A program made the translations under genes and the position numbers. From Macrostomum lignano (Eukaryota): 64,000 nt of DNA. The notes under the pieces are model-generated. The model did not search any database. It worked only from the letters and a program-made list of their open reading frames with translations, and was not told the DNA's origin. The stretch spans positions 62,001-126,000 of the forward strand of contig NIVC01001433.1 in the NCBI GenBank assembly GCA_002269645.1, written 5' to 3'. Position 1 is the first letter of the stretch; each line of letters opens with the position of its first letter. Of this stretch, positions 15,510-53,607 are shown one piece after another.

Positions 15510-16949
15510 ATGACTTTCCCAATTCATCCGAACAATTACAACTCGATGCTGCCTGCGCCCAGCCAGCTGGACGAACCGAACACGTTCAGGTCTGTGTGGA
15601 CGCCCAGTAGTAAACTTTGGTTTTAAATTGTGTTCAACATGAATTATTAGCTACTGTTGCTATTTGAACAACAAAATTACATGACCTAATTTACACAGCA
15701 AAGTACTTGCCCCGTCAATAGGATAAAGTACATGGATAGTGTACATGTTTGAAAGTTTAACTATCTGCATATCCGTCTGAATCCTGCAGCGAAGGCATTC
15801 GCCGAGTTCGACTGCTGCGCAGCGCTCAGCTGGAGTGCATCACGGTGGCCCTGGTCTGGATCGATGTTGCCATGGTTACGCATCAGATTGTGCTGGACTT
15901 CTCGCTAACGGGTGAGAATGTATGGTTTATGAGTAGGAAATCTATACTTCTAAACGAGTTGGTTGTTCTCTTTTTTTGTTTGTTTGTTTGTCAATGGCAA
16001 AATTTACTGCGATCTAATTACTGTTTATGAATTCGTTCTTTGCCTTCTCAATGTTATCATACACTCAGTTCCAGGTTCTCAGCAATTCCCCATTGAGCCA
16101 TGGCATCTCAGAAACTCCCCATTGAGCCAATTGGCATCTCAGAAACTCCCCATTGAGCCAATTGGCATCTCAGCAACTCCCCATTGAGCCAATTGGCATC
16201 TCAGCAACTCCCCATTGAGCCAATTGGCATCTCAGCAACTCCCCATTGAGCCAATTGGCATCTCAGCAACTCCCCATTGAGCCAATTGGCATCCCAGCAA
16301 CTCCCCATTGAGCCAATTGGCATCTCAGCAACTCCCCATTGAGCCAATTGGCATCTCAGCAACTCCCCATTGAGCCAATTGGCATCCCAGCAACTCCCCA
16401 TTGAGCCAATTGGCATCTCAGCAACTCCCCATTGAGCCAATTGGCATCTCAGCAACTCCCCATTGAGCCTTGGCATCTCAGCAACTCCCCATTGAGCCAA
16501 TTGGCATCTCAGCAACTCCCCATTGAGCCAATTGGCATCTCAGCAACTCCTTTTTTTCTGTTTATTAATTTGCCTATGAGCAATCTTTGTCATCATTTTT
16601 CTTGACCCCGAACCTTGAACAGAATATGAATCTCCTCAGACTATGGTGTGTAAAATTTCCGCATCCTAATTCCACTCCAAAATGCTACTCTGCTATATGC
16701 TATTTAAATCTTTCAACCATGCGCGCCATAATTTTATTGATGCACCTATACTATAATACTAGTAGTAGTGTATATGGACAATTGTTTCTTTTTTGACAGC
16801 CTCAAACTCCACCGACAAAAACGGCACGGACGAGCGGCCACAGCTGGCCGAATTCAGTAGCGACCATCCGGCACTGAGTAGCCGGGCCTCCACTGGCCTC
16901 TTCATCGCCATCACCGCCATGGCCTTCCTGTTCCTGCTCGAGGTGGAAC

Positions 16950-16990
<41 letters not shown>

Positions 16991-16993
16991 GCC

Positions 16994-17040
<47 letters not shown>

Positions 17041-17091
17041 GTCTGTCTGTGTCTGTCTGTGTCTGTCTGTCTGTCTGTTTGTCTGTCTGCC

Positions 17092-17164
<73 letters not shown>

Positions 17165-17267
17165 TAGTGTCTGTCTGTCTGTCTGTGTCTGTCTGTCTGT
17201 CTGTTTGTCTGTCTGCCTGTCTGCCTGTCTGTCTGTCTGTCTGCCTGTCTGTCTGTCTATCTGTCTA

Positions 17268-17315
<48 letters not shown>

Positions 17316-17347
17316 CCTGTCTGTCTGTCTGTCTGTCTGTCTCTGCC

Positions 17348-17419
<72 letters not shown>

Positions 17420-19410
17420 AGTCTGTCTGTCTGTCTGTCTGTCTGTCACCCTACTAAAACCTGTCATCTCCCATCTGCCCGCAGACAATCGCCAGAAATA
17501 TCTACATCCGGGTATCTCAAAAACGCTTCTGCCTAATGAATGTAAGTAATGTTATGAATATCATTTTGCATTTTTAAAGATAAATAAAGTTAATTCATTA
17601 AACACTATTATCTATATTATATTTCCAGGTGTGCGACTTAGTCTTGTGTGCAGCCTCGTTCTGCATCAACCTGTCGCTGCTGGTGGCGCGGGTCACCCCG
17701 TTAGCCAGGGATTTCGTAGCCCTGCTAATCACTTTTAGACTCGTCAGATTGCTCACATTATTTGGAGGTTAGTTTCTTTTTCTCAGCACTTTTATTTAGA
17801 AAACTCTGCATACTCTACTATATCGCTTATTCAGTAGAGTGTTTCGCTCCTGTTTCACTATGATGAATTTCTATTTGAATAACCGCCAGGCTTAACTCGA
17901 GCTGAGAAACGGCAAATTCTGCGAATGCTCGACGGCTACAGACGAGAGGAGAGCTTCAACCTTGAGCAGCAGCGAATGCTGCAGACTGAGCTGGAGAATC
18001 GAACTCGGGAGTGTCAGGATCTGCGAGAGTTGGTTAAGTCGGCTACTTTGTCTAGGAATCGACTGAGGCAGAGTGAGTTATGTCAGCTATCGGGGAAGTT
18101 TTGGAATGGGAAAAAATAGGATTGCAATAAATATGGGTGCAGTAGAGATGAAGTAACAATAGAGATAGAGAGTGATAAGAGTGAAAATAGAGTGATTAAG
18201 TGAGGATAGAGAGTGATAGAGAGTGAGAATAGAGATTGATAAAGTGGTGAGGATAGAGAGTGATGAAGTGAGGATAGAGAGTGATAAAGTGAGGATAGAG
18301 AGTGATAGAGAGTGAGAATAGAGATTGATAAAGTGGTGAGGATAGAGAGTGATGAAGTGAGGATAGAGAGTGATAAAGTGAGGATAGAGAGTGATAAAGT
18401 GAGGATACAGAGTGATAAAGTGAGGATAGAGAGTGATAAAGTGAGGATAGCGAGTGATAAAGGAGAATAGAAAATGATAAGAGAGTGAGAATAGAGTGAT
18501 AGAGTGAGGATAGAGAGTGATAGCGAGTGATAAAGTGAGAATAGAGAGTGATAAAATGTCCCCATGGCTCTATGGTCAAAAGGAAGGATTCAAGAGCAAT
18601 CAGGGAAACGTACAATGCCACTATATGTTACCCAATCGCGTACAACTCAATCCTGCAGAGCAGATGGGCCAGCACCAGCTGAAGCAGGAAGACGGCAGTC
18701 CGAACGAAGAATCCTGCACGGATGTCACCGGCGGCTCTCCAGACAACAGTCGGACAGGCACCAGAAGCGTACCGGACGATTCCGGGCACAGTTCCGATTC
18801 TAGTCCGGATTCGCCGCCGCGGGAGACTTTCGGTCGAGGTCTTGGTTAGTTTGTTCAATATTCTTTGTTGGATTGAAGTATTTTGGGTGTAGGTTCGATG
18901 TACATTAGATCCAGGGTTGAATGTACATTGGGAAGCGAGGTTGAATGTACATTGAGGTGCAGTTTGGAATGTACATTGGGGGAGCAGAGTTGAATGTGCA
19001 TTGGGGTGCGGTATTGAATGTATATTAGCGAGCAAGGTTGAATGTACATTGTTAAGTAGGGTTAAATGTACATTGGGGTGTGTGATTCAATGTTAGGGTG
19101 CGGAATTCAATGTACATCGGGGTGCGGTGTGAATTTAAGTATTAATAATTAGGTGTTCACAGTGCAATGTACTAAGTATGCATGCTAACTATTTAAATTT
19201 ACATTAAAAATGAAATGCCAATTAGAATTCTTGTGCTCATACTATGAGTAATGCATCACAGAAAGCGCTTGGATTCTCCTTTAACTTCCAGAGTCATCGT
19301 CGACAGAAGCGCCTCAGATTGGCATTGAGCTGGCCGAGGTCGCGGATTCGAATCCTCAGCCGGCACAGGATGAACTCGACGAAGGCGGCGCTTTTACTTC
19401 AAAATTTTAG
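15510..19410 (+). CDS. Voltage-sensor-domain-only membrane protein, Hv1 (HVCN1)/TMEM266-like; exons 15510-15589, 15790-15911, 16800-16942, 17485-17541, 17629-17767, 17890-18072, 18659-18844, 19292-19410
   Basis: Spliced frame gives S1 [17 protein letters not shown]2 [12 protein letters not shown]3 [13 protein letters not shown] and S4 [15 protein letters not shown], then a coiled-coil-like segment ([24 protein letters not shown]) and an acidic tail. Seven GT-AG introns have consistent phases (2,1,0,0,1,1,1). No pore domain. The exon 7 donor is ambiguous by a few nt. Confidence 0.75.
16070..16548 (+). repeat. 31-bp minisatellite gagccaattggcatctcagcaactccccatt (Hv-like intron 2)
   Basis: About 15 tandem copies. 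Confidence 0.92.
16950..17448 (+). repeat. (TCTG)n microsatellite (Hv-like intron 3)
   Basis: Direct reading. Confidence 0.95.
18150..18555 (+). repeat. 21-bp GA-rich minisatellite gtgaggatagagagtgataaa (Hv-like intron 6)
   Basis: Tandem units. Confidence 0.85.
18890..19130 (+). repeat. Degenerate minisatellite with core ttgaatgtacattggg (Hv-like intron 7)
   Basis: About 8 diverged copies of aatgtacatt. Confidence 0.7.
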
Positions 19411-21195: not shown

Positions 21196-21525
21196 TAGCG
21201 TCATCCAAATGTCATCAGCGCGGAAAGCATAGCACCAGAAGCGTCAAATAAATCGCTTATTTACTCTAAACAGTTATGAATTATTAACCTTAGCATTGAA
21301 AGCTTGCATATACGATCGACTATGCCATAGACGAAATGAAAAATGCACTCCAGACGTTGGGACCAGTAAGCGCCATCGACTATACATTTGTGTCTATGCT
21401 GGACAAAGTTCTTAGAGAACGCGCCTACATGTAGCTCAGATCTATTATAAAAAGTACTCGCCGTTCTTTAATAATTGAATAAATTAGAAATCAGTCAACT
21501 GATTGACAAAACACAAGATCACAGC

Positions 21526-31966
<10,441 letters not shown>

Positions 31967-32180
31967 ATTAAAAAAACGCTTTTCTTACTATCAGTAGCTT
32001 GAAAGAACATTTACGTTCCTGACCGTGGAATGGCTTCTATTTTTCGCTGCTAATGAAGCCATAAAAATAATTTTAAAAATCGTTACAACTACGGCAGGTA
32101 TGGCAGAAATAGCGAAACTTAATTTGTCTTAATGTCTTCGTTTTGTAGGAAAGTGGACACTACCATCATCATCGCTCATG

Positions 32181-33515
32181 CCCCACCGCTCAGCTCCGCA
32201 CCCACCCCATCCTTCACTCTCTTTCTCCACCGCTCAGCTCCACACCCACCCCATCCTTCACTATCTTTTGCCCACTGCTCAGCTCCGCAACAACCCCATC
32301 CTCCACTCTCTTTCCCCACCGCTCAGCTCCACACCCACCCCATCCTCCACTCTCTTTCCCCACCGCTCAGCTCCGCACCCACCCCATCCTCCACTCTCTT
32401 TCCCCACCGCTCAGCTGCGCACCCGTCCCATCCTCCACTCTCTTCCCTCACCGCTCAGCTCCGCACCCATCCCATCCTCCACTCTCTTCCCTCACCGCTC
32501 AGCTCCGCACCCGTCCCATCCTCCACTCTCTTCGCTCACCGCTCAGCTCCGCACCCACCCCATCCTCCACTCTCTTTCCCTCACCGCTCAGCTCCGCACC
32601 TATCCCATCCTTCACTCTCTTCCCTCACCGCTCAGCTCCGCACCCACCCCATCCTCCACTCTCTTCCCTCACCGCTCAGCTCCGCACCCACCCCATCCTC
32701 CACTCTCTTCCCTCACCGCTCAGCTCCGCACCCACCCCATCCTCCACTCTCTTTCCCCACCGCTCAGCTCCGCACCCACCCCATCCTCCACTCTCTTTCC
32801 CCACCGCTCAGCTGCGCACCCGTCCCATCCTTCACTCTCTTCCCTCACCGCTCAGCTCCGCACCCACCCCATCCTCCACTCTCTTTCCCCACCGCTCAGC
32901 TCCGCACCCACCCCATCCTCCACTCTCTTTCCCCACCGCTCAGCTGCGCACCCGTCCCATCCTCCACTCTCTTCCCTCACCGCTCAGCTCCGCACCTATC
33001 CCATCCTCCACTCTCTTTCCTCACCGCTCAGCTCCGCACCCACCCCATCCTCCACTCTCTTTCCCCACCGCTCAGCTCCGCACCCACCCCATCCTCCACT
33101 CTCTTCCCTCACCGCTCAGCTCCGCACCCACCCCATCCTCCACTCTCTTTCCCCACTGCTCAGCTCCGCACCCACCCCATCCTCCACTCTCTTTCCCCAC
33201 CACTCAGCTCCGCACCCACCCCATCCTCCACTCTCTTCCCTCACCGCTCAGCTCCGCACCCATCCCATCCTCCACTCTCTTTCCCCACCGCTCAGTTCCG
33301 CACCCATCCCATCCTCCACTCTCTTCCCTCACCGCTCAGCTCCGCACCCACCCCATCCTCCACTCTCTTCGCTCACCGCTCAGCTCCGCACCCACCCCAT
33401 CCTCCACTCTCTTCCCTCACCGCTCAGCTCCGCACCCATCCCATCCTCCACTCTCTTCCCTCACCGCTCAGCTCCGCACCCACCCCATCCTCCACTATCT
33501 TTCCCCACCGCTCAG
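32181..33515 (+). repeat. 44-bp minisatellite ccgctcagctccgcacccaccccatcctccactctctttcccca, about 30 copies (left arm of an inverted pair)
   Basis: Period 44. Confidence 0.95.
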
Positions 33516-33636
33516 CTTCGCACGTACCTCCAATATCAAAACAATTAAATCACTTTTTAAATACAATCGGGAAAATTAGTTAAGCTTTACATTCAAAACT
33601 GTTGACGTTAATGGTGAAGTCCGACTGCGGTACAAT

Positions 33637-34750
33637 TTAACTATACAAAGCAGTCTTTATCCAACCAGTGGAGAAGACCGCTATGACGCCGGCCATGCTC
33701 ACAAGTATTCCGGTCACATTGAGCGCCAGAGCCACCCGGCCCTGGCTGCGTGCCTGCCTGCGCCAATTGTCAACGCTCCGTTGGGCCAACATTCGATGAG
33801 AACGAAACGAAAAAATCAATGCCGCAAGGCCGAACGGCATGTTGAGGAACATAGCAGTTAGAATCGACATGAGTAAGTAGGTTGTGCGATTCGAATTCAA
33901 TGTGTCCGGGTTGGCTGCTTGAGAAGGATCCCCGACGACATTGAGGGACTGCGCGTCTGAAAGATTGTCGCATGAAAATTACAGTTAAGCGGTCGGAAAA
34001 GAGAGTCGAGGATGGGGTGGGTGCGGAGCTGAGCGGTGAGGGAAGAGAGTGGAGGATGGGGTTGGTGCGGAGCTGAGCGGTGGGGAAAGAGAGTGGAGGA
34101 TGGGGTGGGTGCGGAGCTGAGCGGTGAGGGAAGAGAGTGGAGGATGGGATGGGTGCGCAGCTGAGCGGTGAGGAAAGAGAGTGAAGGATGGGACGGGTGC
34201 GCAGCTGAGCGGTGAGGAAAGAGAGTGGAGGATGGGGTGGGTGCGGAGCTGAGCAGTGGGGAAAGATAGAGAAGGATGGGGTGGGTGCGAGGCTGAGCGG
34301 TGGGGAAAGATAGTGAAGGATGGGGTGGGTGTGGAGCTGAGCGGTGGGGAAAGATAGTGAAGGATGGGGTGGGTGCGGAGCTGAGCGGTGGGGAAAGAGA
34401 GTGAAGGATGGGGTGGGTGCGGAGCTGAGCGGTGGGGAAAGAGAGTGGAGGATGGGGTTGGTGCGGAGCTGAGCAGTGGGGAAAGAGAGTGGAGGATGGG
34501 GTGGGTGCGGAGCTGAGCGGTGGGGGAAGAGTTTAGAGTGAAATGAGAGAAGTTTTTTAAAACAATATATGATGTAACCACGCTCTGGTCGTGGGATATG
34601 GCAAGGGAAATTTTCCAAAAGTACCTTCGATCTCCGTGCGCCTCCTGAGCAGAGCCGTCGAGACTGGGCCAGGTCTGTGGCCAGGCCTGCTGACTCCCGC
34701 TCTGCTGCACCCCCTGCTGCCTCGGCTCCGTCTCCCACGCCGCCACACAT
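33637..34750 (-). CDS. Small CD225/dispanin-family (IFITM/PRRT-like) membrane protein; probable exons 34750-34625 and 33948-33637
   Basis: YLLMSILTAMFLNMPFGLAALIFSFRS..QARSQGRVALALNVTGILV matches the CD225 layout. ATG 34750 to donor aag|gtac (phase 0) joins acceptor gcgcag|tcc in frame. An alternative acceptor at 33956 would need a different first-exon frame. Confidence 0.68.
34005..34527 (-). repeat. Reverse-complement copy of the 44-bp minisatellite, about 12 copies, in the CD225 intron
   Basis: gatggggtgggtgcggagctgagcggtggggaaagagagtggag is the reverse complement of the 32181-33515 unit. Confidence 0.95.
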
Positions 34751-35414
34751 GCCTTTCCGGAGCCCCTACACCTCTCTGTACCTCACCCGTTCCCCCTTTT
34801 TCCATGCGCTTTACCTTATCTATCTTGTACTTTTCCCGCTTCCCATATTTTTTCTCTTTTTGCACTTTTTTCTGCGCTGTCCCTCCCTTTTCTGGTACCT
34901 ACTTACAGTACTTTGTGCGCTCACCGTCTCCCCACCCCTATAGAAACTCCCAAACGGTGATGCAAGTCTTGTGACCCCTCTTTCCCCTCGATGACTCATC
35001 GATGACTCACCACCCCTCTTGCGCAACCTTTTCTCATGCCATTGTTCTCCTCCCCAAATTTCTCATGCGACACCCACCCCACCTCCGCTTCTATTGTTCT
35101 CGTTTTTGATTCTTTTGTTCTCCTCTTCGCACCCAATTATCACATTTTCCCAGATCTTCTCTTTCTTTTGTTTTCGTTTTCGCACCCAATTAGCACCTTT
35201 TCTCCAATGTTTACTTTTCTATTGTTCTCGATTCTCCCCAATTATCCCCGATTTCCATTTCCTTTGTTCTCGACCCCAGCCCCATTGTTCTCAATGTTTG
35301 CTTGCGCAACACTTTCGCGACCTCCCGCTGCGCCAATTATCCACCCACCCCTTCTCCGGATTGCGCAATTCTCCCATTTCTCATGTTGCTATGCCGTTCT
35401 CATGCTTCTCATCA

Positions 35415-35505
35415 TGACTCATTCTGACGTCATTCTGCCGGCAGCCAATCAGAGAGAGGGAGTCATGGAAACGAACTTGGAGCGGTGGCTGGGAAGGCTA
35501 TATAA
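35415..35505 (+). promoter_or_regulatory. Putative Pol II promoter: AP-1 (35415), CRE (35425), CCAAT (35445), TATA (35499)
   Basis: TGACTCA, TGACGTCA, CCAAT and TATATAA in canonical order within 90 bp; GTAAGT donor at 35789. Confidence 0.5.
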
Positions 35506-37154: not shown

Positions 37155-38655
37155 GTGTTCTCTCTCTCCTCTCCCCCTCTCTCCTTCTCTCTCTCCTCTC
37201 CCCTCTCTCCTTCTCTCTCTCCTCTCCCCCCTCTCTCCTTCTCTCTCTCCTCTCCCCCCTCTCTCCTTCTATATCTCCTCTCCCCCCTCTCTCCTTCTCT
37301 CTCATTCTCTCTCTCCTCTCCCCCTCTCTCCTTCTCTCTCTCCTCTCCCCCTCTCTCCTTCTCTCTCTCCTCTCCCCCTCTCTCCTTCTATATCTCCTCT
37401 CCCCCCTCTCTCCTTCTCTCTCTCCTCTCCCCCCTCTCTCCTTCTCTCTCTCCTCTCCCCCCTCTCCTTCTCTCTCTCCTCTCCCCCCTCTCTCCTTCTC
37501 TCTCTCCTCTCCTCCCTCTCTCCTTCTCTCTCTCCTCTCCCCCTCTCTCCTTCTATATCTCCTCTCCCCCCTCTCTCCTTCTCTCTCATTCTCTCTCTCC
37601 TCTCCCCCCTCTCTCCTTCTCTCTCTCCTCTCCCCCCTCTCTCCTTCTCTCTCTCCTCTCCCCCCTCTCTCCTTCTCTCTCTCCTCTCCCCCCTCTCTCC
37701 TTCTCTCTCTCCTCTCCCCCTCTCTCCTTCTATATCTCCTCTCCCCCCTCTCTCCTTCTCTCTCATTCTCTCTCTCCTCTCCCCCCTCTCTCCTTCTCTC
37801 TCTCCTCTCCCCCCTCTCTCCTTCTCTCTCATTCTCTCTCTCCTCTCCCCCCTCTCTCCTTCTCTCTCGTTCTCTCTCTCCTCTCCCCCCTCTCTCCTTC
37901 TCTCTCTCCTCTCCCCCCTCTCTCCTTCTCTCTCTCCTCTCCCCCTCTCTCCTTCTATATCTCCTCTCCCCCCTCTCTCCTTCTCTCTCTCCTCTCCCCC
38001 CTCTCTCCTTCTATATCTCCTCTCCCCCTCTCTCCTTCTCTCTCTCCTCTCCCCCCTCTCCTTCTCTCTCTCCTCTCCCCCTCTCTCCTTCTATATCTCC
38101 TCTCCCCCTCTCTCCTTCTCTCTCTCCTCTCCCCCCTCTCTCCTTCTCCCTCCTTCTCTCTCTCCTCTCCCCCCTCTCTCCTTCTCTCTCATTCTCTCTC
38201 TCCTCTCCCCCCTCTCTCCTTCTCTCGCTCACTCTCTCCCCCTCTCCCCCTCTTCTCGCTAACTCTCTCATTTTCTTGCTCCCTTTCTCTCTCCTCTTTC
38301 CCCTCTCTCCGCTCTCTTTCTCTCTCTCTATATATATATATCTCCTTCTCTCTATCTCCCTCTATCTCACTCCCCCCTCTCTCCCCTCTCTCCTTCTCTC
38401 ACTCCCTCTCTCCCTCTATCTCACTCCCCCTCTCTCCTCTCGCACTTCCCTCAGCCTCTTTCTCTCCATTTCTCTCTCTCGCTTTGTTTCTCCCTCTCTT
38501 CCCCTTTACCTCCCTCTCTCTTCCCCTCTACCTCCCTCTCTCTTCTCTACCCTCCGTCTCTTTTTCTCCCTCTCCCGCTCCTTGTCCCTCTCTCTCCGTC
38601 TCTCGCACTCTTTCTCAATTCCTCTCTCCCACTTCTCTCTCTTTCCCTCTCACCT
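37155..38655 (+). repeat. CT-rich simple/minisatellite repeat
   Basis: About 1.5 kb of ctctctcctctcccccctctctccttct variants. Confidence 0.95.
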
Positions 38656-41451: not shown

Positions 41452-44400
41452 CTACTCAGAAGATGCAGTCGGTGGAGGCGGTGGAGGCGGCGGTGGTGGC
41501 ATCATTTCTGCGTCCGTCGATGACGATGCAGCGCTGGTGGCAGCTCCGACACTCTCGGAGAGCGCAGTTGGCTCCTCAGGCATTGGCGGCGGCTTGCCGT
41601 AGTTGGGATTAGGCACGGAGGTGTCCACCTGCCAGACCTGGACAAGGGTCTCGCTCAACGGTATCATCTGCGGCAGAATTTCGTCAACGTGCAAATCCTG
41701 CAACTCGAACCATTTCTCCGTACTGGAGTGCTGCAGGTGCACCCTGTAGGTGCCGCTCACAGGGGTGCCTGGCGATTGGATTTGGGGTGGGTATCATGGG
41801 GAGCATGCGGCGCCAAAGGCGATGGAAAGTCTTGAACTTGAGATGCGATAAGAGAAGGGAACGGAGTGACAAGAATAGTCAGCGAGTGAGACACAGAGTG
41901 ACAAGTATAGTCAGCGAGTGAGACACAGAGTGACAAGAATAGTCAGCGAGTGAGACGCAGAGTGACAAGAATAGTCAGCGAGTGAGACACAGAGTGACAA
42001 GAATTGTCAGCGATTGAGACACAGTGACAAGAATAGTCAGCGAGTGAGACAAAGAGTGATAAGGCTAGTAAGCCAGTGAGACACATAGTGACAAGAATAG
42101 TTAGCGACTGAGACACAATGACAAGAATAGTCAGCGAGTGAGACAAAGAGTGACAAGAACAGACACAGGAAAATGAGACACAGAGTGACAAGAAAAGACA
42201 CAGGAAAATGAGACACAGAGTGACAAGAACAGACACAGGAAAATGAGGCACAGAGTGACAAGAACAGACGCGGGAAAATGAGACACTGAGTGACAAGAAC
42301 AGACGCGGGAAAATGAGACAGAGTGACAAGAACAGATACAGGAAAAAGAGACAGAGTGACAAGAACAGACGCGGGAAAATGAGACACAGAGTGACAAGAA
42401 CAGACGCGGGAAAATGAGACACAGAGTGACAAGAACAGACACAGGAAAATGAGGCACAGAGTGACAAGAACAGACACAGGAAAATGAGACAGAGTGACAA
42501 GAACAGACACAGGAAAATGAGACACAGAGCGACAAGAACAGACACAGGAAAATGAGACACAGAGCGACAAGAACAGACACAGGAAAATGAGACACAGAGC
42601 GACAAGAACAGACACAGGAAAATGAGACACAGAGTGACAAGAACAGACACAGGAAAATGAGGCACAGAGTGACAAGAACAGACACAGGAAAATGAGGCAC
42701 AGAGTGACAAGAACAGACGCGGGAAAATGAGACAGAGTGACAAGAACAGATACAGGAAAAAGAGACAGAGTGACAAGAACAGATACAGGAAAAAGAGACA
42801 GAGTGACAAGAACAGATACAGGAAAAAGAGACAGAGTGACAAGAACAGACACAGGAAAATGAGACAGAGTGACAAGAACAGATACAGGAAAAAGAGACAA
42901 GAACAGACACAGGAAAATGAGACACAGAGCGACAAGAACAGACACAGGAAAATGAGACACAGAGTGACAAGAACAGACGCGGGAAAATGAGACAGAGTGA
43001 CAAGAACAGACACAGGAAAATGAGACAGAGTGACAAGAACAGACGCGGGAAAATGAGACAGAGTGACAAGAACAGATACAGGAAAATGAGACAGAGTGAC
43101 AAGAACAGACGCGGGAAAATGAGACACAGAGTGACAAGAACAGATACAGGAAAATGAGACAGAGTGACAAGAACAGACACAGGAAAATGAGACACAGAGA
43201 CTCAGGGAACAGACTCTGTGTCTGTTCTTCACCTTGAAGAACAGGCACAGGAAAATGAGACACAGAGTGACAAGAACAGACACAGGAAAATGAGACACAG
43301 AGTGACAAGAACAGACACAGGAAAATGAGACACAGAGTGACAAGACTGAGGGACTGAGAATATGCTAAGGAACTCACCGTCATGCACCACGTTGGCAACC
43401 AAGTTGTAGGTGGTGAACTGGTGTTTAGCCCTGGTCCACGGGTCCAACAAGTCGCCAAAATCAACTCCGCGAACGGGAAAATTTACAATAGTGGGATTTT
43501 TCTCCCGAGTGAATAGATTCTTGACGAAGCGTTTGACATAGAGCAGAATGTACTGGGGCAGCTTGATCAGCTGGAACCGCTTCATAGTGGAGTCTTTGTG
43601 CGTCTTGTACTCTTTTTTGGCGACGCCGTTAAACTTGGACAATATGCTGGACAGTGGCACCTGTGGGTTAAATAATTAAATGTCAGTCACTAGCCTTAGA
43701 GCTAAAGTATACAGTACTAAATTATGTGCCCTGGGTCATATAAATATCAGTTTTGCCCATATTTATCTTGAATATCCTGAATACTGAGCACTCTGAATAC
43801 CCCTGAGCACCCTAAATATTCCCCCTGAGCACCCTGAATATTCCCCCTGAGCACCCTGAATATTCACCCCTAAAAACCCTGAATATTTCCCCTGAGCACC
43901 CTGAATATTCTCTCTAAGCACCCTGAATATTCGCCCCTAAAAACCCTGAATATTCCCCCTGAGCACCCTGAATATTCACCCCTAAAAACCCTGAATATTT
44001 CCCCTGAGCACCCTGAATATTCTCTCTGAGCACCCTGAATATTCGCCCCTAAAAACCCTGAATATTTCCCCTGAGCACCCTGAATATTCTCCCTGAGCAC
44101 CCTGAATATTCGCCCCTAAAAACCCTGAATATTTCCCCTGAGCACCCTGAATATTCTCCCTAAGCACCCTGAATATTCGCCCCTAAAAACCCCGAATATT
44201 CCCCTGAGCACCCTGAATACTACCCCTGAGCACCCTGAATATTCCCCCTGAGCACCTTGAATATTCGCCCCTAAAAACCCCGAATATTTCCCCTGAGCAC
44301 CCTGAATATTCGCCCCTAAAAACCCTGAATATTTCCCCTGAGCACCCTGAATATTCTCCCTAAGCACCCTGAATATTCGCCCCTAAAAACCCCGAATATT

Positions 44401-47400
44401 CCCCTGAGCACCCTGAATACTACCCCTGAGCACCCTGAATATTCCCCCTGAGCACCTTGAATATTCGCCCCTAAAAACCCCGAATATTCCCCTAAGCACC
44501 CTGAATACTACCCCTGAGCACCCTGTATATTCCCCCTGAGCACCCTGAATATTCGCCCCTCAAAACCCTCAATATTCCCCCCTGAGCGCCCTGAATATTT
44601 GCCCCTAAAAACCCTGAATATTCCCCCTGAGCACCCTGAATATTCACCCTGAGCACCCTGAATACTCCCCCTGAGCACCCTGAAGCACATGACACTCCAA
44701 CAGTACTACTAGCAGGCTATCCAGTACATACGAAAATCAATACGATATATTACAATAACTGAAAACCCAAACTATTCTCACCTGCGGAATGAGCTTCTCT
44801 TTCATCTCGTCCGGATACAGCGGAGGCGGCGGCAGGTCGCAGGTTAAAAACAAGAAATGCGACTCCTCAACTTTCTCCGTGTATTCGTCCGTGTGAGCGA
44901 GAAGCAGTCGCTGCTCCTCTGTGAGCTCGACTGGGATCACCTGTTGATAAAAAAAAATAAACGGTACGAGTAACTATCAATTTAGTTCAATGGGCAAATG
45001 CCTCGGCATCTAATTAGTATTAATATTAGGGAAATTGCCTTACCTTGTGACTATAGATCCTCATTTTGCCGCGAAAAGTCTTATTAACAATTGAACTGTT
45101 GACAGACTTAGTGCCGTTAAGACCCATATGAAGAGTGTTGAGCAGCCAGGACATAAAATCTACAGCGTCGCTTTGCACTGTGAATTGGAATCGTTTCTTG
45201 CTGCAGAGTACGACCGCCTGGGGAGAGAAATTGGGTGCACTTTTAATAGATGGACGTTGATTGTGGGACTGGCGCTCTGAACAGGTGGGTGTAGGTGTGG
45301 CATTCATTCTGCTCAGAGGGTGATGTTCAGGGTGTTCAGAAATATGGATTTTCAGGGGCTGGTGCTCAGGAATATGGATTCTTATCCCAGGGACTGTTGC
45401 ACAGTGAATGGTGCTTAGGGACTGGTGCTCAGAGGCTGGTGCTCAGGGACTGGTGCTCAGAGGCTGGTGCTCAGGGACTGGTGCTCAGAGGCTGGTGCTT
45501 AGGGACTGGTGCTCAGAGGCTGGTGCTCAGGGACAGGTGCTCAGAGGCTGGTGCTCAGAGGCTGGTGCTCAGGGACTGGTGCTCAGGGACTGGTGCTCAG
45601 AGGCTGGTGCTCAGGGACAGGTGCTCAGAGGCTGGTGCTCAGGGACAGGTGCTCAGAGGCTGGTGCTCAGGGACTGGTGCTCAGGGACTGGTGCTCAGAG
45701 GCTGGTGCTCAGGGACTGGTGCTCAGAGGCTGGTGCTCAGGGACTGGTGCTCAGAGGCTGGTGCTCAGGGACTGGTGCTCAGAGGCTGGTGCTCAGGGGC
45801 TGGTGCTCAGGGACTGATGCTTAGGGACTGGTGCTCAGAGGCTGGTGCTCAGGGTCTGGTGCTCAGGGGCTGGTGCTCAGAGGCTGGTGCTCAGGGACTG
45901 GTGCTCAGAGGCTGGTGCTCAGGGACTAGTGCTCAGGGACTGGTGCTCAGGGGCTGGTGTCAGGGACTGATGCTTAGGGACTGGTGCTCAGAGGCTGGTG
46001 CTCAGAGGCTGGTGCTCAGAGGCTGGTGCTCAGAGGCTGGTGCTCAGGGGCTGGTGCTCAGGGACTAGTGCTCAGGGTACCGTCAGCGTACCTGGAGAAA
46101 CTCGTGCGGCGACACGTGGGCTTTGAAGTTGCGCGGGTTCCAGAGCTTGCGCAGCAGCTCCCCGAAGCGTCGAACCAGCAGGCTGGCCCGGTCTCCGGGC
46201 GGCCTCGGCAGCCCAATGTAGTTCTGCTCCCGAAGAAAATAATTACGCAAAGGCGTTGCCCTGGACAGAATATGAATAATAACACTGCAATAGTCGCTAG
46301 CTTTGAGATTGTTCAGGCCGACAATGCCCGGATAATATGGACTGCCGTCGTGAGCTCGGACCATTCGAGTATCCGAGTCCATTCGAGCGATATAAGCTCG
46401 GGAATAGGTGGGATTAGCCAGGTAGATGATGTCCTGCAGCGACGGGTGTACGAACTCGTAATCGTCTGGCAGGCAGTAGAATTTATGAGTCTCCAGATTG
46501 AGAAACACGTAGTGACCCATCGCCATGCTGTGGGTGTGGGCGTGCGTGCCCTTGCCGCGACCCTGGGAAGAAGGAATGGGGAGAGATGTCCCATCTTTGT
46601 AAAATAAGGTAACTTACTACTCGTGGGTTCCCTCTCTCAAATCTTCGCTCCCATCTTTTTGAATCCTAAATCGCATCCTCTGGGTCTTAGATCTCTTTTA
46701 AGCTTACAACCTTGGATCCCATCCCCCGAATCCTAGATCCCATCCCCCGAAAGCAAGATACCACCCCCCGAATCCTAGTTCCCATCCCCCCGAATCCTAG
46801 ACCCCATCCCCGGAATCCTAGATCCCATCTCCCGAAAGCAAGATACCACCCCCCGAATCCTAGAATCCTAGTTCCCATCCCCCGAATCCTAGACCCCATC
46901 CCCGGAATCCTAGATCCCATCTCCCGAAAGCAAGATACCACCCCCCGAATCCTAGAATCCTAGTTCCCATCCCCCGAATCCTAGACCCCATCCCCGGAAT
47001 CCTAGATCCCATCCCCGGAATCCTAGATCTCATCCCCCAACTCCTAGACCCCACCCCCTGAATCCTAGATCCCATCCTCTGAATGCAAGATACCACCCCC
47101 CGAATCCTAGTTCCCATCCCCCCGAATCCTAGACCCCATCCCCGGAATCCTAGATCCCATCTCCCGAAAGCAAGATACCACCCCCCGAATCCTAGAATCC
47201 TAGTTCCCATCCCCCCGAATCCTAGACCCCATCTCCGGAATCCTAGATCCCATCCCCCGAAAGCAAGATACCACCCACCGAATCCTAGACCCCATCCCCG
47301 GAATCCTAGATCCCATCTCCCGAAAGCAAGATACCACCCCCGAATCCTAGAATCCTAGTTCCCATCCCCCGAATCCTAGACCCCATCCCCGGAATCCTAG

Positions 47401-47949
47401 ATCCCATCCCCGGAATCCTAGATCTCATCCCCCAACTCCTAGACCCCACCCCCTGAATCCTAGATCCCATCCTCTGAATGCAAGATACCACCGCCCGAAT
47501 CCTAGTTCCCATCCCCCCGAATCCTAGACCCCATCCCCGGAATCATAAACCCCATCCTCCGAATCCTAAACCTCATCATCCAAATCCTAACCCCTATCCC
47601 TTAAATCCTAAACCCCATCCCCAAATCGCAGCCTCACCTGAAAATACTTCCCGCACACCAGGCAAGCGTAGACATTCAGATGCGACAGTGACACGGAGCA
47701 CAGCTTCTCAAAATCGAAATCCAATCGATTCCGATCGATGGTGTCCAAATATGGGCAGTGCCGGCTTCGCTCATCAGTTCCGGGTTTACGATCTTCAGCC
47801 TCAGTTTTGAACTCAGTCAATCCATTATTGTCCAACTCATCCTTTGCCTCCTGCTTGATTGGCTGGTCAAGTTTAGCCAGTTTAGTCGGCGGTTCGCCTT
47901 CGCCATTACCATTTTGACCTTCAGCTTCACTGCTTTGTTTGGAATCCAT
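41452..47949 (-). CDS. USP39: U4/U6.U5 tri-snRNP-associated protein 2 (Sad1; ZnF-UBP plus inactive USP domain); exons 47949-47638, 46562-46092, 45217-45044, 44940-44782, 43660-43378, 41768-41452
   Basis: RHCPYLDTIDR..LDFDFEKLCSVSLSHLNVYACLVCGKYFQ|GRG; FYCLPDDYE; YYPGIVGLNNLKASDY; LWNPRNFKAHVSPHEFLQ; DLPPPPLY; EKNPTIVNFP; WFELQDLHV..LPQMI. Five GT-AG introns with phases 0,0,0,0,1. Confidence 0.95.
41865..43345 (+). repeat. 32-bp, then 33/35-bp related minisatellites (core gagacacagagtgacaagaa) in USP39 intron 5
   Basis: Tandem units. Confidence 0.93.
43790..44685 (+). repeat. About 22-bp minisatellite ccccctgagcaccctgaatatt (USP39 intron 4)
   Basis: Tandem units with cctaaaaacc variants. Confidence 0.92.
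45345..46077 (+). repeat. 14-bp minisatellite ggtgctcagggact/ggtgctcagaggct (USP39 intron 2)
   Basis: Tandem units. Confidence 0.93.
46710..47600 (+). repeat. Compound minisatellite of about 21 bp, atcccatccccggaatcctag (USP39 intron 1)
   Basis: Tandem and higher-order units. Confidence 0.88.
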
Positions 47950-48283
47950 GCTGCAGATTGGGTCCAAAATTGTAATTTACGCTACTGATAGTAGGTTAGG
48001 GCTGGTAAAATGTGACTAGATTATTATTCAGGGTGTCGACGGCCTCCTTTATATTATTTATTCTCCTTTATTTGGCTCTGCCCCTCCTTCATCTCCTTCA
48101 TTTGGACAAAATCTCCTTTATTATTGTTGTATTTTGTACAGTTTTGTACATTTGTGTACTTTTTGTACAATTATAACTCTCAACTGATATAATGTTCTGC
48201 ATCAAAATAGTAGCAATAAATTTTTATAAACTGTCTAGCACGCCTGCAGCTACCTGTAGACCACCTGGTGCAGGTTTGTATGG

Positions 48284-49751
48284 ATGGCCCAAGTGTCAAT
48301 TCGAAGTTTTTTTCGCGATTTAAAGACAAAGCTACAGTCTGAGACTGAAGATCTCACTGGTTCGGTTGTTCTTGACACTGGTACCTGTGGATTGCACACA
48401 GCAAGCCGATCATCGCATGGCAGCCATGATGCCAGTGGTTGGCATCTTCAGCAGTTTCTACGCAACCTGTATTATTTGTTTAAAGACTGTCCAGCTCGAG
48501 TAACAGAATTTCAAGCAGTGACGCACTGCTACAATCTACGCCCAATCCAGTTCTGTACTGTCCGCTGGCTAGAGAATTCCAAAGCAGCCAACCGAGCACT
48601 GGAAATGCTTCTTAGCCTACGCCAGTGGCTGGCTTCAAAGAGACCTGATGATTCAGAGACCCTCATGTCACAGCTTCGATCTGCCTGTGCTGACAAGTAC
48701 TTAGAGGCCAAGCTTCATTTTTTGTCTCTATCGCCAACCTAGTTGAGCCATTTTTGCGACAGTTCCAAGCTGCTGCACCAATGTTTCCATTTTTGTACGA
48801 ATCTCTAGGAAAAGTGCTTCGCAGTGTCATGCTACGATTTGTGGATGCCGACGTGATGAAGAAGTGCCTCACTGTGACCCAGCTCTTAGACGTTGACTTA
48901 AGCAACCAAGGTGTGCAGAAAACTACTGTGGACTTTGGTTCAGCTGCTTAAGCTGCTATTGAACAACTCAAGCGACAAGCAACACCACCAACTCAACATG
49001 AACACTTGGCTTTTCGCACCACTAGTCGCGAGTTTCTTTTGAAAGTGCATGAAAAGTTGGTTAGGAAGTCCCCTTTGGCACAGCGTATGGCCAGGGCAGC
49101 AAGTTCTCTATCACCGCACCTTCTTCAGGAGGACACTAGTTTGTGTAACAAGAGGTTCAAGTTGCTAATGAAGCTGCTTTCTGACTCTGGTTGGTTGACA
49201 CATGAGGATGCTGATAAAGCAGTTTTTTTATCATGTAAAGTGATCCTCAGTGCTGTGTAGCTCTCTGCAGAAGTTTGACAGGCATACTGATCAACTTGAT
49301 GTGTTCTTTTCTAACCTCTTCTCAGCAGAAAGTGCTGAAAAATTGCAAGGAACTTCTTTGGATTGTGCCTGTTGTTCTAATATTGTCACATGGGCAGGCA
49401 TCATTTGAAAGTGGCTTCTCTATTAACAATAGTCTGCTGGTGGAAAACTTATCTGACCGAAGCCTAATTGTACAGAGAATTGTTTCCCAAGCTATTCATG
49501 ATGCCGGATCAGTCACAGCAATTGCTATCACTCCCAAAATGCTGCAGCATGTACGATCTGCCCATTCAAGATGCCTGGAAGCTCGAGAGCTGCAGCATAA
49601 ACTGGACTCCGAAAGTGAACAGAAGACTAAAAATAAAAAGTGGCAGCAAGAGATGGTTGAGAAACTTGAGAAAGAAGTGGCAGCTAAGCGTCATACAGCA
49701 GATGCAGCAACAAGGATGCCAATGAGCTTCAAAAGAAGCTTGATGAGTTGA
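48284..49751 (+). pseudogene. Fragmented hAT-family transposase (C-terminal part)
   Basis: Four broken ORFs with LDTGTCGLH, YYLFKDCPAR, FCTVRWLEN (RW motif) and LSHGQASFESGFSIN (hATC dimerisation-like); stops and frameshifts lie between the pieces. Confidence 0.78.
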
Positions 49752-51975: not shown

Positions 51976-52492
51976 CTTCTATTATGTTTAGCAGTTTTGT
52001 TGTGTTTTTAAGGTGTTTTGATAAAAAAAATCTTTTTGCACTACTAAGATTCAAACCCAGGTTGCTACATTAGCATTCCAGTCTGTTCGCATCTTGGCTA
52101 TCTCTTTTCAATTGGAGAACATGAATTGTGGCCCTTATAATTCAATTCTTACTGCAAGTCAATTGAAGTAAAAAGTTATGACATAATCAATTTCTCAGTC
52201 AGCCAGTATCAGTCTCAATTTGAGTTAGCAATATTGGTTACGCAATTTAAATCAAGTCATGTGTGCATTTTTTCGGCACTGTTTTCAACTTGTTGTGATG
52301 CAATCTTTATCACAATCAGAATTCAGCCAGTCAGTTTTTTCTCTAGCATTCTTACAATGAATTTTAGATTGAAAGAGCTGCTTGACCTTTGCAAAAAAGC
52401 ATGTTTTTCAAATATTTAATCCCTTTAAAATTTAGCAATTTCTTAGCCAAGATGCATGTACTGTCCCAGGAAAATTTCTGATCGAATGGTGC

Positions 52493-52568
52493 AAGTTTGA
52501 AGAAAATCGGTTGAGCCAATTTTTCTGAAATCTATTGCATAGCTACAGACATTTCATTTTTAGTATAT
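52493..52568 (+). mobile_element. Second copy of the HINE/Helentron-like 3' fragment (its body may extend to about 52140)
   Basis: Near-identical to 30561-30643 apart from a short internal indel. Confidence 0.55.
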
Positions 52569-53607
52569 GGGAGAGGAGATAAGACAAAAATGTTTCTCGC
52601 ATAACTCTAAATGTACAACAGCAACTTATGTAACATGAATGCATAAAATTAATAAAAAGTCACATCTTTTTATTTTAATGTTGTAGTTTTTTGCTTAAGT
52701 CTTGTTACTAAGATGAAGTCCCCCTTCAATAGCTGTATCTTCTTTATTTGGGAGACAAAGAATGTGTCGACACCCTGTATTAATTTATGCTATAAACCAA
52801 AAAAATAAATACTTTTTTTCCTGCTACCAGACAGGCTTTGTCATCAATACTAGCAACTTACATAATGAAAAATTGATCTTTATATAAATTACTTTAAATT
52901 TAAATATAGCCAAGAAGTCACACACTGTTAAGTCTATATAAAACATAAAACTATAAGTAAAACTAAAACAAGTGCAATTCATTTTCTTTAAGAATAGAAT
53001 TTAAAAAATCAAAATAGAAAGATAAAAAATGATATACTTAAGGCACAGTAGAATTTGCTAAGCATATTTGACCTATTGAAATAGCACAAGTCTGCAGACT
53101 TTCTTAAAAATTTCTGTTATAATTTTAATATCTTTTACAAGCATACATTAGATACTTTAATAAGTCTATAATAGTATAACACAATAAAAATTAATTTTGT
53201 AAGTTGACAAGACAATTATAGTTAATTTAATAAAGTTGATAAAATACCACTGAACTTATTTTTCAAATACATATCAATAAATTCACAACCTTTTTTCATA
53301 ATTGCATTTTTATAGGCCTAAAGCATATGAATTTATACATTGACTGTAATTTTGCATTTACTCTTTCAAAGGTCAAATAATACATCACTATAATATATTT
53401 TATTTTTATCTCTATTTTAGATTGCAATTGGATCAATAATTAACCATTCAACAATTTGCCTATTTGAAAAGATTACTAGCCTAGCATCAATAGTTTATTT
53501 AACATTAATACCAGATATTACTATTTTGCTATACCTAGATATCAAGCAAAGAATTATGGTTACTTTGGTGACATCTATTTTGGTGATACGTTACTTTGGT
53601 AATAAAA

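What the first reader, a model, noticed from the sequence alone, without database searches (positions are those of the whole stretch)
32181..34527. Long inverted repeat made of 44-bp minisatellite arms encloses a CD225 gene's terminal exon
About 30 units on the plus strand (32181-33515) and about 12 reverse-complement units (34005-34527) flank a 0.5-kb loop containing the whole CD225-domain exon. One arm lies in the gene's intron and the other 3' of its stop. A read-through pre-mRNA could form about 500 bp of dsRNA looping out the exon (editing, siRNA, back-splicing or 3'-end control), and the DNA could form a cruciform. The layout also resembles Foldback-type elements with tandem-repeat TIRs carrying a captured exon, though I see no TSD.
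Basis: partly seen in the sequence, partly recalled or inferred. Interest (0 to 1): 0.7.

Follow-up and report, generated by a model that had tools for sequence, protein, structure and literature searches.

The report
Inverted minisatellite arms around CD225 exon
Two blocks of the same 44-bp tandem repeat, in opposite orientations, really do bracket the last exon of a small membrane-protein gene, but this most likely reflects a local inverted duplication in a DNA stretch that is 44% tandem repeats, not a mobile element or a proven regulatory device.

Summary
A 44-bp minisatellite forms a left arm (32181-33523, 30.5 units, C-rich on +) and an inverted right arm (33983-34538, 12.4 units), 91-93% complementary. 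The 459-bp loop carries a CD225-domain exon on the minus strand.

The gene-structure reading is plausible. Homology starts upstream of the first in-frame ATG, in-frame stops sit at the arm edge, and a cag acceptor lies 24 nt from the right arm, so the exon is probably spliced. The left arm starts 113 nt after the stop.

- The left arm fills the spacer between two convergent genes (pyruvate carboxylase on +, CD225 on -).
- A related 16-mer array fills the last pyruvate carboxylase intron.
- 44% of the window is minisatellite, and introns here are typically one array each.

The Foldback-element reading fails: no target-site duplication, no unique terminal domain, no other copy in 64 kb. A cruciform is unlikely with a 459-bp spacer. 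Canonical back-splicing is not possible for a terminal exon. A roughly 480-bp RNA stem is thermodynamically possible (-1166 kcal/mol) but needs read-through transcription, which I could not test.

Most likely this is a neutral local inverted duplication of a multi-unit block. Interest is modest.

The parts
31165..31585 (.). 16-bp minisatellite (GGAGTGAGGTGGGTGC, 26 copies). It is G-rich on + and fills the last intron of the pyruvate carboxylase gene. It is a diverged relative of the G-rich strand of the 44-mer, so it is inverted relative to the left arm.
   Evidence: Tandem Repeats Finder. blastn gives 72-74% inverted matches to the left arm. Alignment of the 16-mer trimer to the reverse strand of the 44-mer scores 40 against shuffles of 22.4 +/- 4.3, p=0.0015. 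The sequence shows the donor AAG|GTAGGG at 31161/31162 and the acceptor gctcag|G at 31636/31637.
31637..31966 (+). Terminal coding exon of a pyruvate carboxylase gene (biotinyl domain, AMKM motif). The stop TAA is at 31964-31966. AATAAA (31962) and ATTAAA (31967) overlap or abut the stop.
   Evidence: Pfam Biotin_lipoyl E=1.5e-18. The last two exons align to human pyruvate carboxylase residues 1005-1178, the C-terminus, E=3e-49. Poly(A) hexamers.
32181..33523 (.). Left arm: 30.5 units of the 44-bp minisatellite, C-rich on +. It lies between the stop codons of the two convergent genes, 214 nt after the pyruvate carboxylase stop and 113 nt after the CD225 stop. In the CD225 sense it reads G-rich.
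   Evidence: G4Hunter mean -1.19 on +. In the minus-strand reading it holds 16 GGTGAG and 31 GGTGGG motifs.
33524..33982 (.). Unique 459-bp loop between the arms.
   Evidence: It has no internal repeat and G4Hunter is about 0.
33637..33956 (-). Probable terminal exon of a CD225/dispanin-family gene: 106 codons plus the stop TAA at 33639-33637. The acceptor AG is at 33958-33957. A branch-point-like CTTAAC sits at the inner edge of the right arm.
   Evidence: Pfam CD225 at 34.5 bits, above the 27.1 cut-off. The full HMMER search finds 22 weak relatives, best E=2e-8 and 42% identity. Alignment A1 shows homology upstream of the first ATG. Translation shows stops at the junction. No 3'-end evidence is available.
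33983..34538 (.). Right arm: 12.4 units of the same 44-bp minisatellite in reverse complement, G-rich on +. It probably makes up most (556 of 668 nt) of the intron upstream of the CD225 exon. In the gene's sense it is C-rich, with 36 polypyrimidine-CAG motifs and a single GT.
34625..34805 (-). Hypothetical first coding exon of the CD225 gene: ATG at 34805, donor AAG|GT at 34625/34624, phase 1, which matches the acceptor phase. It would give a 166-aa protein. This is inference only.
   Evidence: Read from the sequence. The phase arithmetic is mine. There is no Pfam family and no transcript evidence. CCAAT, TGACGTCA and TGAGTCA motifs lie on the minus strand at about 35000-35450.

Best explanation
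This is a fixed, non-mobile, spaced inverted repeat. It arose when a multi-unit block of a 44-bp minisatellite was copied locally in inverted orientation across the last exon of a small CD225-family gene. Replication template switching or fold-back repair in a strongly G/C-skewed array is the kind of event that would do this (inferred). The region is one where nearly every intron and spacer is filled by a minisatellite. Afterwards each arm kept turning over by unit gain and loss, and the left arm grew to 30 units.

One arm now forms most of the gene's probable only intron. The other fills the spacer between this gene and the convergent pyruvate carboxylase gene. I think it has no dedicated function.

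Its likely consequences are incidental. Any CD225 transcript that reads past its 3' end before the intron is removed can fold into a roughly 480-bp near-perfect duplex, a potential substrate for dsRNA-editing or dicing enzymes. The downstream arm is G-rich on the sense strand right after the probable 3' end, so it may slow RNA polymerase between the two convergent genes.

Shown: the structure, its position relative to the coding sequences, the shared unit variants, and the folding energy. Inferred: the mode of origin, the intron assignment, and all RNA-level effects.
For: 1. The structure is real in the sequence.
2. The context is saturated with minisatellites. Forty-eight arrays cover 44.2% of the window. 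Successive pyruvate carboxylase introns between 26.7 and 31.6 kb are each dominated by one array. An array next to splice signals is therefore the local norm, not a special placement.
3. The arms come from one variant pool. Mean unit distance is 3.19 within the left arm, 4.08 within the right arm and 3.74 between arms, per 44 nt. There are no arm-specific fixed differences (permutation p=0.14).
4. Multi-site unit haplotypes are shared. R08 resembles L15 (G13, G21, T22, T31, T44) and R05 resembles L02 (A15, T31, A36). This points to copying of a multi-unit block rather than independent growth from single seed units.
5. A third, diverged array of the same family lies 600 bp further left in the opposite orientation. 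The family has therefore spread locally in both orientations more than once.
6. There are no transposon hallmarks.
7. The unit is not found in the metagenome collection, and there is no other copy in the window.
8. The C-rich strand has no stop codon in any frame, which explains the long ORFs through both arms without invoking coding.
9. Folding the minus-strand RNA 33045-34540 gives -1166 kcal/mol with a near-continuous stem.
Against: No reads, transcripts, small RNAs or related genomes could be examined. Neutrality is therefore a default position, not a demonstrated result. The arms being equally similar within and between could also mean ongoing exchange or selection for complementarity. 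The collinear outer-to-inner order of unit variants (L1-L7 with R3-R9) that a simple inverted duplication predicts is only suggestive (p=0.16-0.23). Three related arrays alternating G/C/G around the terminal exons of two convergent genes is an arrangement that a purely random process would not often produce.
Confidence: 0.6

Rival explanations
1. The hairpin is a functional RNA element. The intronic C-rich arm pairs co-transcriptionally with the G-rich arm just past the 3' end. The resulting long dsRNA either regulates the CD225 gene (occluding the branch point and 3' splice site, controlling 3'-end processing, editing, or endogenous siRNA production) or helps terminate transcription between the convergent genes.
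For: - The stem is very stable (-1166 kcal/mol).
- The inner edge of the intronic arm lies only 24 nt from the acceptor and includes a branch-point-like CTTAAC.
- The 113 nt before the downstream arm contain no canonical poly(A) hexamer, so read-through is plausible.
- The downstream arm is G-rich on the sense strand (G4Hunter about 1.2). From my own knowledge, not tested here, G-rich sequence after poly(A) sites is associated with polymerase pausing.
- The arms show no arm-specific divergence.
Against: There is no expression, small-RNA or editing data and no comparative conservation. Long hairpin siRNA loci known from Drosophila (own knowledge) have arms derived from their target genes. Here the arms match nothing else in the window except an intronic array at 72-74%. 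In a window that is 44% minisatellite, one inverted pair is not by itself evidence of selection.
Confidence: 0.15
2. It is an assembly artefact. One array, or the loop plus one array, has been placed in the wrong orientation, or two loci sharing the repeat were joined.
For: Tandem arrays of 0.5-1.3 kb are classic sites of assembly error, and no reads could be inspected.
Against: - The arms are 7-9% divergent and unequal (30.5 vs 12.4 units). Palindromic read or amplification chimeras instead give near-identical, symmetric arms.
- Both arm-loop junctions and both outer junctions run into unique sequence.
- The orientation as assembled gives a coherent gene: promoter-like motifs, candidate exon 1 with matching phase, intron, acceptor, intact CD225 ORF.
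- The whole structure is 2.4 kb, easily spanned by single long reads. Long reads were needed anyway to assemble a window with 48 arrays.
- A single mis-join inside one arm would still leave inverted arms around the exon.
Confidence: 0.08
3. The arms are the two halves of one former array, split by an inversion that had one breakpoint inside the array and the other beyond the exon. On this view there was no duplication.
For: A single inversion gives exactly an array(+)-segment-array(-) layout. The arms share one variant pool.
Against: - Undoing either possible inversion would put the CD225 exon on the plus strand, cut off from its upstream part. The ancestral state would then have been a broken gene.
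- The unit phases at the predicted ancestral junctions do not continue into each other. The left inner end is at about phase 18-38 and the right outer end at about phase 20-24. The right inner end is at about phase 12 and the left outer end at about phase 24. I read these.
- Shared multi-site unit haplotypes in similar outer-to-inner order fit a copy better than a split, though not significantly.
Confidence: 0.08
4. It is a Foldback-type (FB/Galileo/Tetris-like) non-autonomous transposon whose tandem-repeat terminal inverted repeats carry a captured exon.
For: Long, unequal inverted arms built of tandem repeats around a non-repetitive middle are the foldback architecture (PMC4079207).
Against: - No direct repeat of 6 bp or more at the outer borders.
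- No unique external terminal domain shared in inverted orientation. The best local match of the outer flanks is 9 nt of TTTTAAAAA.
- No other copy of the unit in 64 kb.
- The middle holds an intact, conserved exon whose acceptor phase matches a candidate upstream exon outside the structure.
- A related array lies outside the supposed element.
Confidence: 0.04
5. The right arm is coding. It would encode a proline/serine/histidine-rich N-terminal repeat of a PRRT-like protein, continuous with the CD225 domain.
For: An ORF runs from the ATG at 34750 through the whole right arm (326 aa). A GT at the arm edge and the cag acceptor would join it in frame to the CD225 exon. Vertebrate CD225 proteins of the PRRT type have proline-rich N-termini (own knowledge).
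Against: - The join needs a 26-nt intron, far shorter than any intron evident in this window (hundreds of nt).
- The direct reading frame is blocked by two stops.
- A 44-nt unit is not a multiple of 3.
- All three frames are open on the C-rich strand simply because the unit lacks stop triplets. The same kind of ORF (483 and 456 aa) runs through the intergenic left arm.
Confidence: 0.03

Closest known systems
Foldback-type transposons (Drosophila FB, Galileo, Tetris)
   Same: Long inverted arms made of tandem repeats, arms of unequal length, and a non-repetitive middle domain. Their repeats can seed satellite arrays (PMC4079207).
   Different: No target-site duplication, no unique external terminal domain, and no second copy in 64 kb. 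The middle is a host exon in working gene context. The unit is 44 bp, not the 10-31 bp or about 220 bp units of those families. Membership was tested and not met.
Reverse-complementary intronic repeats (for example inverted Alu or MIR pairs) that bracket exons and promote RNA circularisation and A-to-I editing
   Same: Two complementary repeat blocks on either side of an exon could pair in the pre-mRNA and loop the exon out (PMC8516420 and PMC7371899 abstracts).
   Different: - The arms are minisatellite arrays, not dispersed transposons.
- The duplex would be about 480-550 bp, longer than an Alu pair.
- The enclosed exon is terminal, with a stop codon and no downstream splice donor.
- The downstream arm lies outside the coding gene, probably beyond its poly(A) site.
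Hairpin-RNA (endogenous siRNA) loci of Drosophila
   Same: Long inverted repeats of a few hundred bp with a loop, some built from tandem units (own knowledge, not checked here).
   Different: Those hairpins are dedicated non-coding transcripts whose arms derive from target genes. Here the hairpin would enclose a coding exon, and the arms match no gene in the window.
Long spaced inverted repeats / quasi-palindromes as DNA fragile sites
   Same: Inverted arms of more than 500 bp on one DNA molecule. They can fold back when the region becomes single-stranded (PMC10164571).
   Different: The 459-bp spacer and 7-9% divergence put it far outside the range that extrudes cruciforms in duplex DNA. Risk exists only in long single-stranded tracts such as resection or break-induced replication.
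Inverted duplications made by replication template switching or fold-back repair
   Same: A local copy in inverted orientation, with no transposon hallmarks, next to sequence prone to stalling replication because of G/C skew and G-runs.
   Different: No breakpoint microhomology could be defined because the borders lie in degenerate repeat units. The mechanism is inferred, not shown.

Membership tests
Minisatellite (tandem repeat, unit 10-100 bp) | Head-to-tail copies of a 10-100 bp unit | tested here: met
   44-bp period, 30.5 and 12.4 copies, 92% matches.
Spaced inverted repeat | Two reverse-complementary arms on one molecule, well beyond chance | tested here: met
   549-556 nt at 91-93% complementarity with a 459-nt spacer. 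blastn bit score 817.
CD225 / dispanin protein family (the enclosed exon) | Match to Pfam PF04505 above the gathering score, covering the domain | tested here: met
   34.5 bits against a 27.1 cut-off, profile positions 4-67 of 68. Weak but consistent relatives, including a Schistocephalus solidus protein and an Intoshia linei protein named TUSC5.
Foldback-type transposon | Terminal inverted repeats containing tandem repeats around a middle domain | tested here: met
Foldback-type transposon | Target-site duplication (8-10 bp in Tetris; PMC4079207) directly outside the arms | tested here: not met
   No shared direct word of 6 nt or more within about 50-60 nt of the two outer borders.
Foldback-type transposon | Unique external terminal domain present in inverted orientation at both ends | tested here: not met
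   The best local alignment of the outer flanks is 9 nt of TTTTAAAAA.
Foldback-type transposon | Several copies in the genome, with different middles | not testable with these tools
   Only 64 kb is available. There is no other copy in it and none in the metagenome collection. The source genome is not searchable.
Complementary-repeat-driven exon circularisation | Reverse-complementary sequences on both sides of the exon | tested here: met
Complementary-repeat-driven exon circularisation | The exon has an upstream 3' splice site and a downstream 5' splice donor within the same transcript | tested here: inconclusive
   An acceptor-like tttcag is present. The exon ends in a stop codon with no donor in the 113 nt before the arm. 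Only cryptic GGTGAG (16) and GGTGGG (31) motifs occur in the downstream arm. The extent of the transcript is unknown.
Complementary-repeat-driven exon circularisation | Back-splice junction reads | not testable with these tools
   No RNA data available.
Hairpin-RNA / endogenous siRNA locus | A transcript able to form a long, near-perfect hairpin | tested here: met
   -1166 kcal/mol and a roughly 480-bp stem for the minus-strand RNA 33045-34540. This is conditional on that RNA existing.
Hairpin-RNA / endogenous siRNA locus | Small RNAs from the arms, and arms complementary to a target mRNA | not testable with these tools
   No small-RNA data. Within the window the arms match only the intronic 16-mer array, at 72-74%.

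The most novel reading that the evidence does not exclude
The three related arrays (G-rich 16-mer in the last pyruvate carboxylase intron, C-rich 44-mer in the inter-gene spacer, G-rich 44-mer in the CD225 intron) form a selected RNA/DNA device at a convergent gene pair. Read-through from the CD225 gene would produce a roughly 500-bp hairpin enclosing its own terminal exon. That hairpin would feed an RNAi or editing pathway, or enforce termination, and so couple or insulate the expression of the two genes. More broadly, minisatellites in this genome would spread locally in both orientations and build exon-enclosing hairpins as a regular mode of gene regulation.
Probability: 0.07. Interest if true: 0.75.

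Novelty: new member of a known kind. Interest (0 to 1): 0.3.

Why it matters
If the hairpin forms in vivo, it would be an example of a gene whose last exon is enclosed by a half-kilobase duplex made of minisatellite rather than transposon sequence. That would extend the complementary-flank idea, known from Alu pairs, to tandem repeats and to 3'-terminal exons, and it would provide a natural dsRNA source at a convergent gene pair.

As the evidence stands, its main value is descriptive. It shows that in this minisatellite-saturated genome a multi-unit array block can be copied in inverted orientation across an exon without disrupting the reading frame. It also flags a site that could misassemble or rearrange.

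The broader feature of the window may be the more interesting lead. Forty-four percent of it is tandem repeat, with one private minisatellite per intron.

Tried and rejected
1. Positional correspondence of unit variants between arms. The gapless register scan gave a best mean of 2.58 mismatches per unit, permutation p=0.16. Unit-level local alignment weighted for rare variants found a collinear path R4-L1, R5-L2, R7-L3, R8-L6, R9-L7 scoring 13.2, against an anti-collinear score of 10.3, p=0.23. This is suggestive but not significant, so I do not claim a defined register.

2. Target-site duplications and homologous outer or inner flanks: none found.

3. Similarity of the last pyruvate carboxylase intron's 3' end to the 44-mer was weak (score 18, p=0.03). 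I did not rely on it.

4. Relatives and other copies:
- The word-index protein search with the CD225 exon gave no hit.
- Exact look-ups of two ORF versions were not on record.
- The metagenome DNA scan with a 29-nt core of the unit gave 0 matches.
- The metagenome protein-guided scan gave no relative.
As a result, no orthologous locus could be compared.

5. Taxon. The USP39 and pyruvate carboxylase exons show a metazoan that is not a close relative of anything named in the databases. The USP39 exon is 54-60% identical to the best database hits and aligns to human USP39 155-268. The named CD225 relatives are a cestode and an orthonectid. Two literature searches for a minisatellite-rich genome of this type gave nothing specific.

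6. My first guess that the ORFs at 48260-49748 are a hAT-like transposase was not supported by Pfam and is withdrawn.

7. Canonical G-quadruplex motifs with loops of 12 nt or less are absent from both arms. Only long-loop patterns occur.

8. Rfam and tRNA scans of the window found nothing.

9. The coding-arm model is rejected (see rival explanations).
Full report
**Observation**

The finding is real at the stated coordinates. Tandem Repeats Finder reports a 44-bp period array at 32181-33523 (30.5 copies, 92% matches). It reports the reverse complement of the same unit at 33988-34531 (12.4 copies, 92% matches). The inverted-repeat search pairs 33983-34531/34538 with many registers of the left array at 89-93% complementarity over up to 556 nt. 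Self-blastn gives 93.75% over 544 nt, bit score 817. The unique loop is 33524-33982, 459 nt. Splitting both arms into units shows that 28 of the 30 complete left-arm units and all 12 complete right-arm units are exactly 44 nt. Two left-arm units carry 1-nt insertions.

**What lies inside and around it**

*The loop.* It carries a minus-strand ORF, 33640-33978, that matches Pfam CD225 above the curated cut-off (34.5 vs 27.1 bits). An exhaustive HMMER search found only distant relatives (22 hits, best E=2e-8, 42% identity). The named ones come from a cestode and an orthonectid. The alignment shows that homology (N-R-x-T-Y/F-x-x-x-S) starts about nine residues before the first in-frame ATG. The frame is closed by two stops exactly at the arm/loop junction. 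A tttcag acceptor sits 24 nt from the inner edge of the right arm.

*A possible upstream exon.* One candidate has a matching phase (ATG 34805, donor at 34625/34624). It would give a 166-aa protein and a 668-nt intron, of which 556 nt are the right arm. Promoter-type motifs (CCAAT, TGACGTCA, several TGAGTCA) lie at about 35.0-35.45 kb on the same strand. This exon is my inference and has no family match.

*The convergent gene.* On the other side, the plus strand carries a pyruvate carboxylase gene. Its last two exons align to the C-terminus of human pyruvate carboxylase (residues 1005-1178, E=3e-49). Its stop codon (31964-31966) is overlapped by AATAAA and followed by ATTAAA. The two genes are therefore convergent. 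The left arm fills most of the roughly 1.67 kb between their stop codons. The pyruvate carboxylase message probably ends about 190 nt before the arm.

*The CD225 3' end.* For the CD225 gene there is no canonical poly(A) hexamer on the minus strand between 33637 and 31000. The only candidate is TTTAAA at 33561. Its 3' end is therefore unknown.

- The window is extraordinarily rich in minisatellites. Forty-eight merged arrays cover 44.2% of the 64 kb, almost all with different units.
- Between 26.7 and 31.6 kb, each successive pyruvate carboxylase intron is dominated by one private array. The last intron (31162-31636) is a donor, a 421-bp array of a 16-mer, about 50 nt, and an acceptor.
- That 16-mer (GGAGTGAGGTGGGTGC) is a diverged relative of the G-rich strand of the 44-mer. 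blastn gives 72-74% inverted matches to the left arm, and the alignment gives p=0.0015 against shuffles.
- The local layout is therefore: G-rich array, pyruvate carboxylase last exon, C-rich array, CD225 last exon (reversed), G-rich array.
- Apart from a (CTGT)n/(CAGA)n microsatellite pair, no other arrays in the window are inverted copies of one another.

**Origin**

- The mean distance between units is the same within arms (3.19 and 4.08 mismatches per 44 nt) as between arms (3.74). No substitution is fixed in one arm (p=0.14).
- Nearly every variant is found in both arms, including multi-site haplotypes. R08 resembles L15 and R05 resembles L02.
- This argues that a block of several already-diversified units was copied. 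The alternative, that each arm grew from a single seed, fits less well.
- The order of variants from outer to inner edge looks collinear (L1-L7 with R3-R9), as an inverted duplication predicts. Permutation tests do not make this significant (p=0.16-0.23).
- A single inversion splitting one array is less likely. Undoing it would detach the exon from its gene, and the unit phases at the predicted ancestral junctions do not continue into each other.
- There is no target-site duplication, no homologous unique sequence outside the arms, and no other copy in the window or in the metagenome collection.

**The proposed mechanisms**

*RNA hairpin.* The minus-strand RNA 33045-34540 folds at -1166 kcal/mol, with a near-continuous stem of about 480 bp enclosing the exon. 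This requires the nascent transcript to reach the left arm before the intron is removed and before cleavage, which could not be tested. If it happens, the duplex would start about 24 nt from the acceptor and would cover a branch-point-like CTTAAC.

*Back-splicing.* It needs a splice donor downstream of the exon (PMC11766002), and a terminal exon has none. The downstream arm does offer cryptic donor-like motifs in the gene's sense (16 GGTGAG, 31 GGTGGG). The idea is therefore weakened rather than excluded.

*Cruciform.* In duplex DNA, inverted-repeat instability drops about 40-fold when the spacer grows from 12 to 20 bp, and it drops further with divergence (PMC10164571). With a 459-bp spacer and 7-9% divergence, extrusion is unlikely. 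Fold-back would be expected only in long single-stranded tracts.

*Foldback transposon.* The architecture resembles FB/Galileo/Tetris. The defining external domain, target-site duplications and multiple copies (PMC4079207) were tested and not found, or could not be tested. The 'cargo' is a host exon in working context.

*Coding arms.* The long ORFs through both arms are explained by the C-rich strand lacking stop triplets. A 44-nt unit is not a multiple of three. Joining the right arm to the exon would need a 26-nt intron.

*Other properties.* Both arms have borderline G-quadruplex propensity (G4Hunter about +/-1.2; long loops only). The arm just downstream of the CD225 stop is G-rich on the sense strand. 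From my own knowledge, not tested here, that is the orientation associated with polymerase pausing after poly(A) sites.

**Verdict**

The structure is real, and its placement relative to the CD225 exon is as described. The most economical explanation is a neutral, local inverted duplication of a minisatellite block, in a region where minisatellites fill almost every non-coding interval. Dicing, editing, splicing or termination effects are possible but undemonstrated. I put 0.6 on that explanation. The alternatives are:

| Alternative | Confidence |
|---|---|
| Selected RNA-level function | 0.15 |
| Assembly error | 0.08 |
| Inversion origin | 0.08 |
| Foldback element | 0.04 |
| Coding arm | 0.03 |

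It is a new example of a known kind of feature (a long spaced inverted repeat; complementary repeats flanking an exon), not a new kind of system. Interest is 0.3. Reads, transcripts, small RNAs and a sister genome would settle it.

Noticed in passing
window 1-64000, especially 21475-31966: Tandem repeats cover 44.2% of the window (48 merged arrays), nearly all with different units of 10-90 bp. Successive introns of the pyruvate carboxylase gene are each dominated by one private minisatellite that runs almost from the donor to the acceptor. For example, intron 31162-31636 is 89% a 16-mer array. This one-minisatellite-per-intron pattern is more unusual than the inverted pair itself.
   Followed up: partly
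window 31165-31585: The 16-bp array in the last pyruvate carboxylase intron is a diverged relative of the 44-mer, in the orientation opposite to the left arm. The pyruvate carboxylase terminal exon is therefore also bracketed by weakly complementary arrays (72-74%).
   Followed up: yes
window 16949-17447 and 24583-24932: A (CTGT)n array of about 127 copies and a (CAGA)n array of about 87 copies are reverse complements of each other (about 91% over 357 nt). They lie 7 kb apart and bracket the 5' exons of the pyruvate carboxylase gene.
   Followed up: no
window 9494-10615 and 37158-38651: Two long TC-rich, low-complexity arrays in direct orientation share about 81% identity over 1.1 kb, 27 kb apart. 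They flank the whole pyruvate carboxylase - CD225 region.
   Followed up: no
window 31962-31972: The pyruvate carboxylase stop codon TAA (31964-31966) is embedded in AATAAA and immediately followed by ATTAAA. This implies a 3' UTR of only a few tens of nucleotides.
   Followed up: partly
window 30182-30557: The units of this 20/44-bp minisatellite (TTCTAGATGAGATCTCACAG) contain the short palindromes TCTAGA and GAGATCTC. This intronic array could form many small hairpins by itself.
   Followed up: no
window 5974-9246 (+): ORFs with an MBT repeat (E=3.7e-13) and a SLED domain (E=5e-24) indicate an Scm/SFMBT-like Polycomb-group gene upstream of the pyruvate carboxylase gene.
   Followed up: partly
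window 41455-47976 (-): Exons of a USP39/Sad1-like gene (U4/U6.U5 tri-snRNP-associated protein 2). One exon aligns to human USP39 residues 155-268. Its introns again hold large minisatellites (43784-44684, 45388-46077, 46715-47622).
   Followed up: partly
window 48260-49748 (+): Several long ORFs (85-170 aa), adjacent to or overlapping one another in different frames, lie in a repeat-free stretch and have no Pfam family. This may be an unannotated gene or a decayed mobile-element ORF. My first guess of a hAT-type transposase was not supported.
   Followed up: partly
window 52001-56000: A sharp drop in G+C to 28-31% (window average about 46%) in a stretch that has no tandem array scoring 150 or more. 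This is a compositional boundary of unknown meaning.
   Followed up: no
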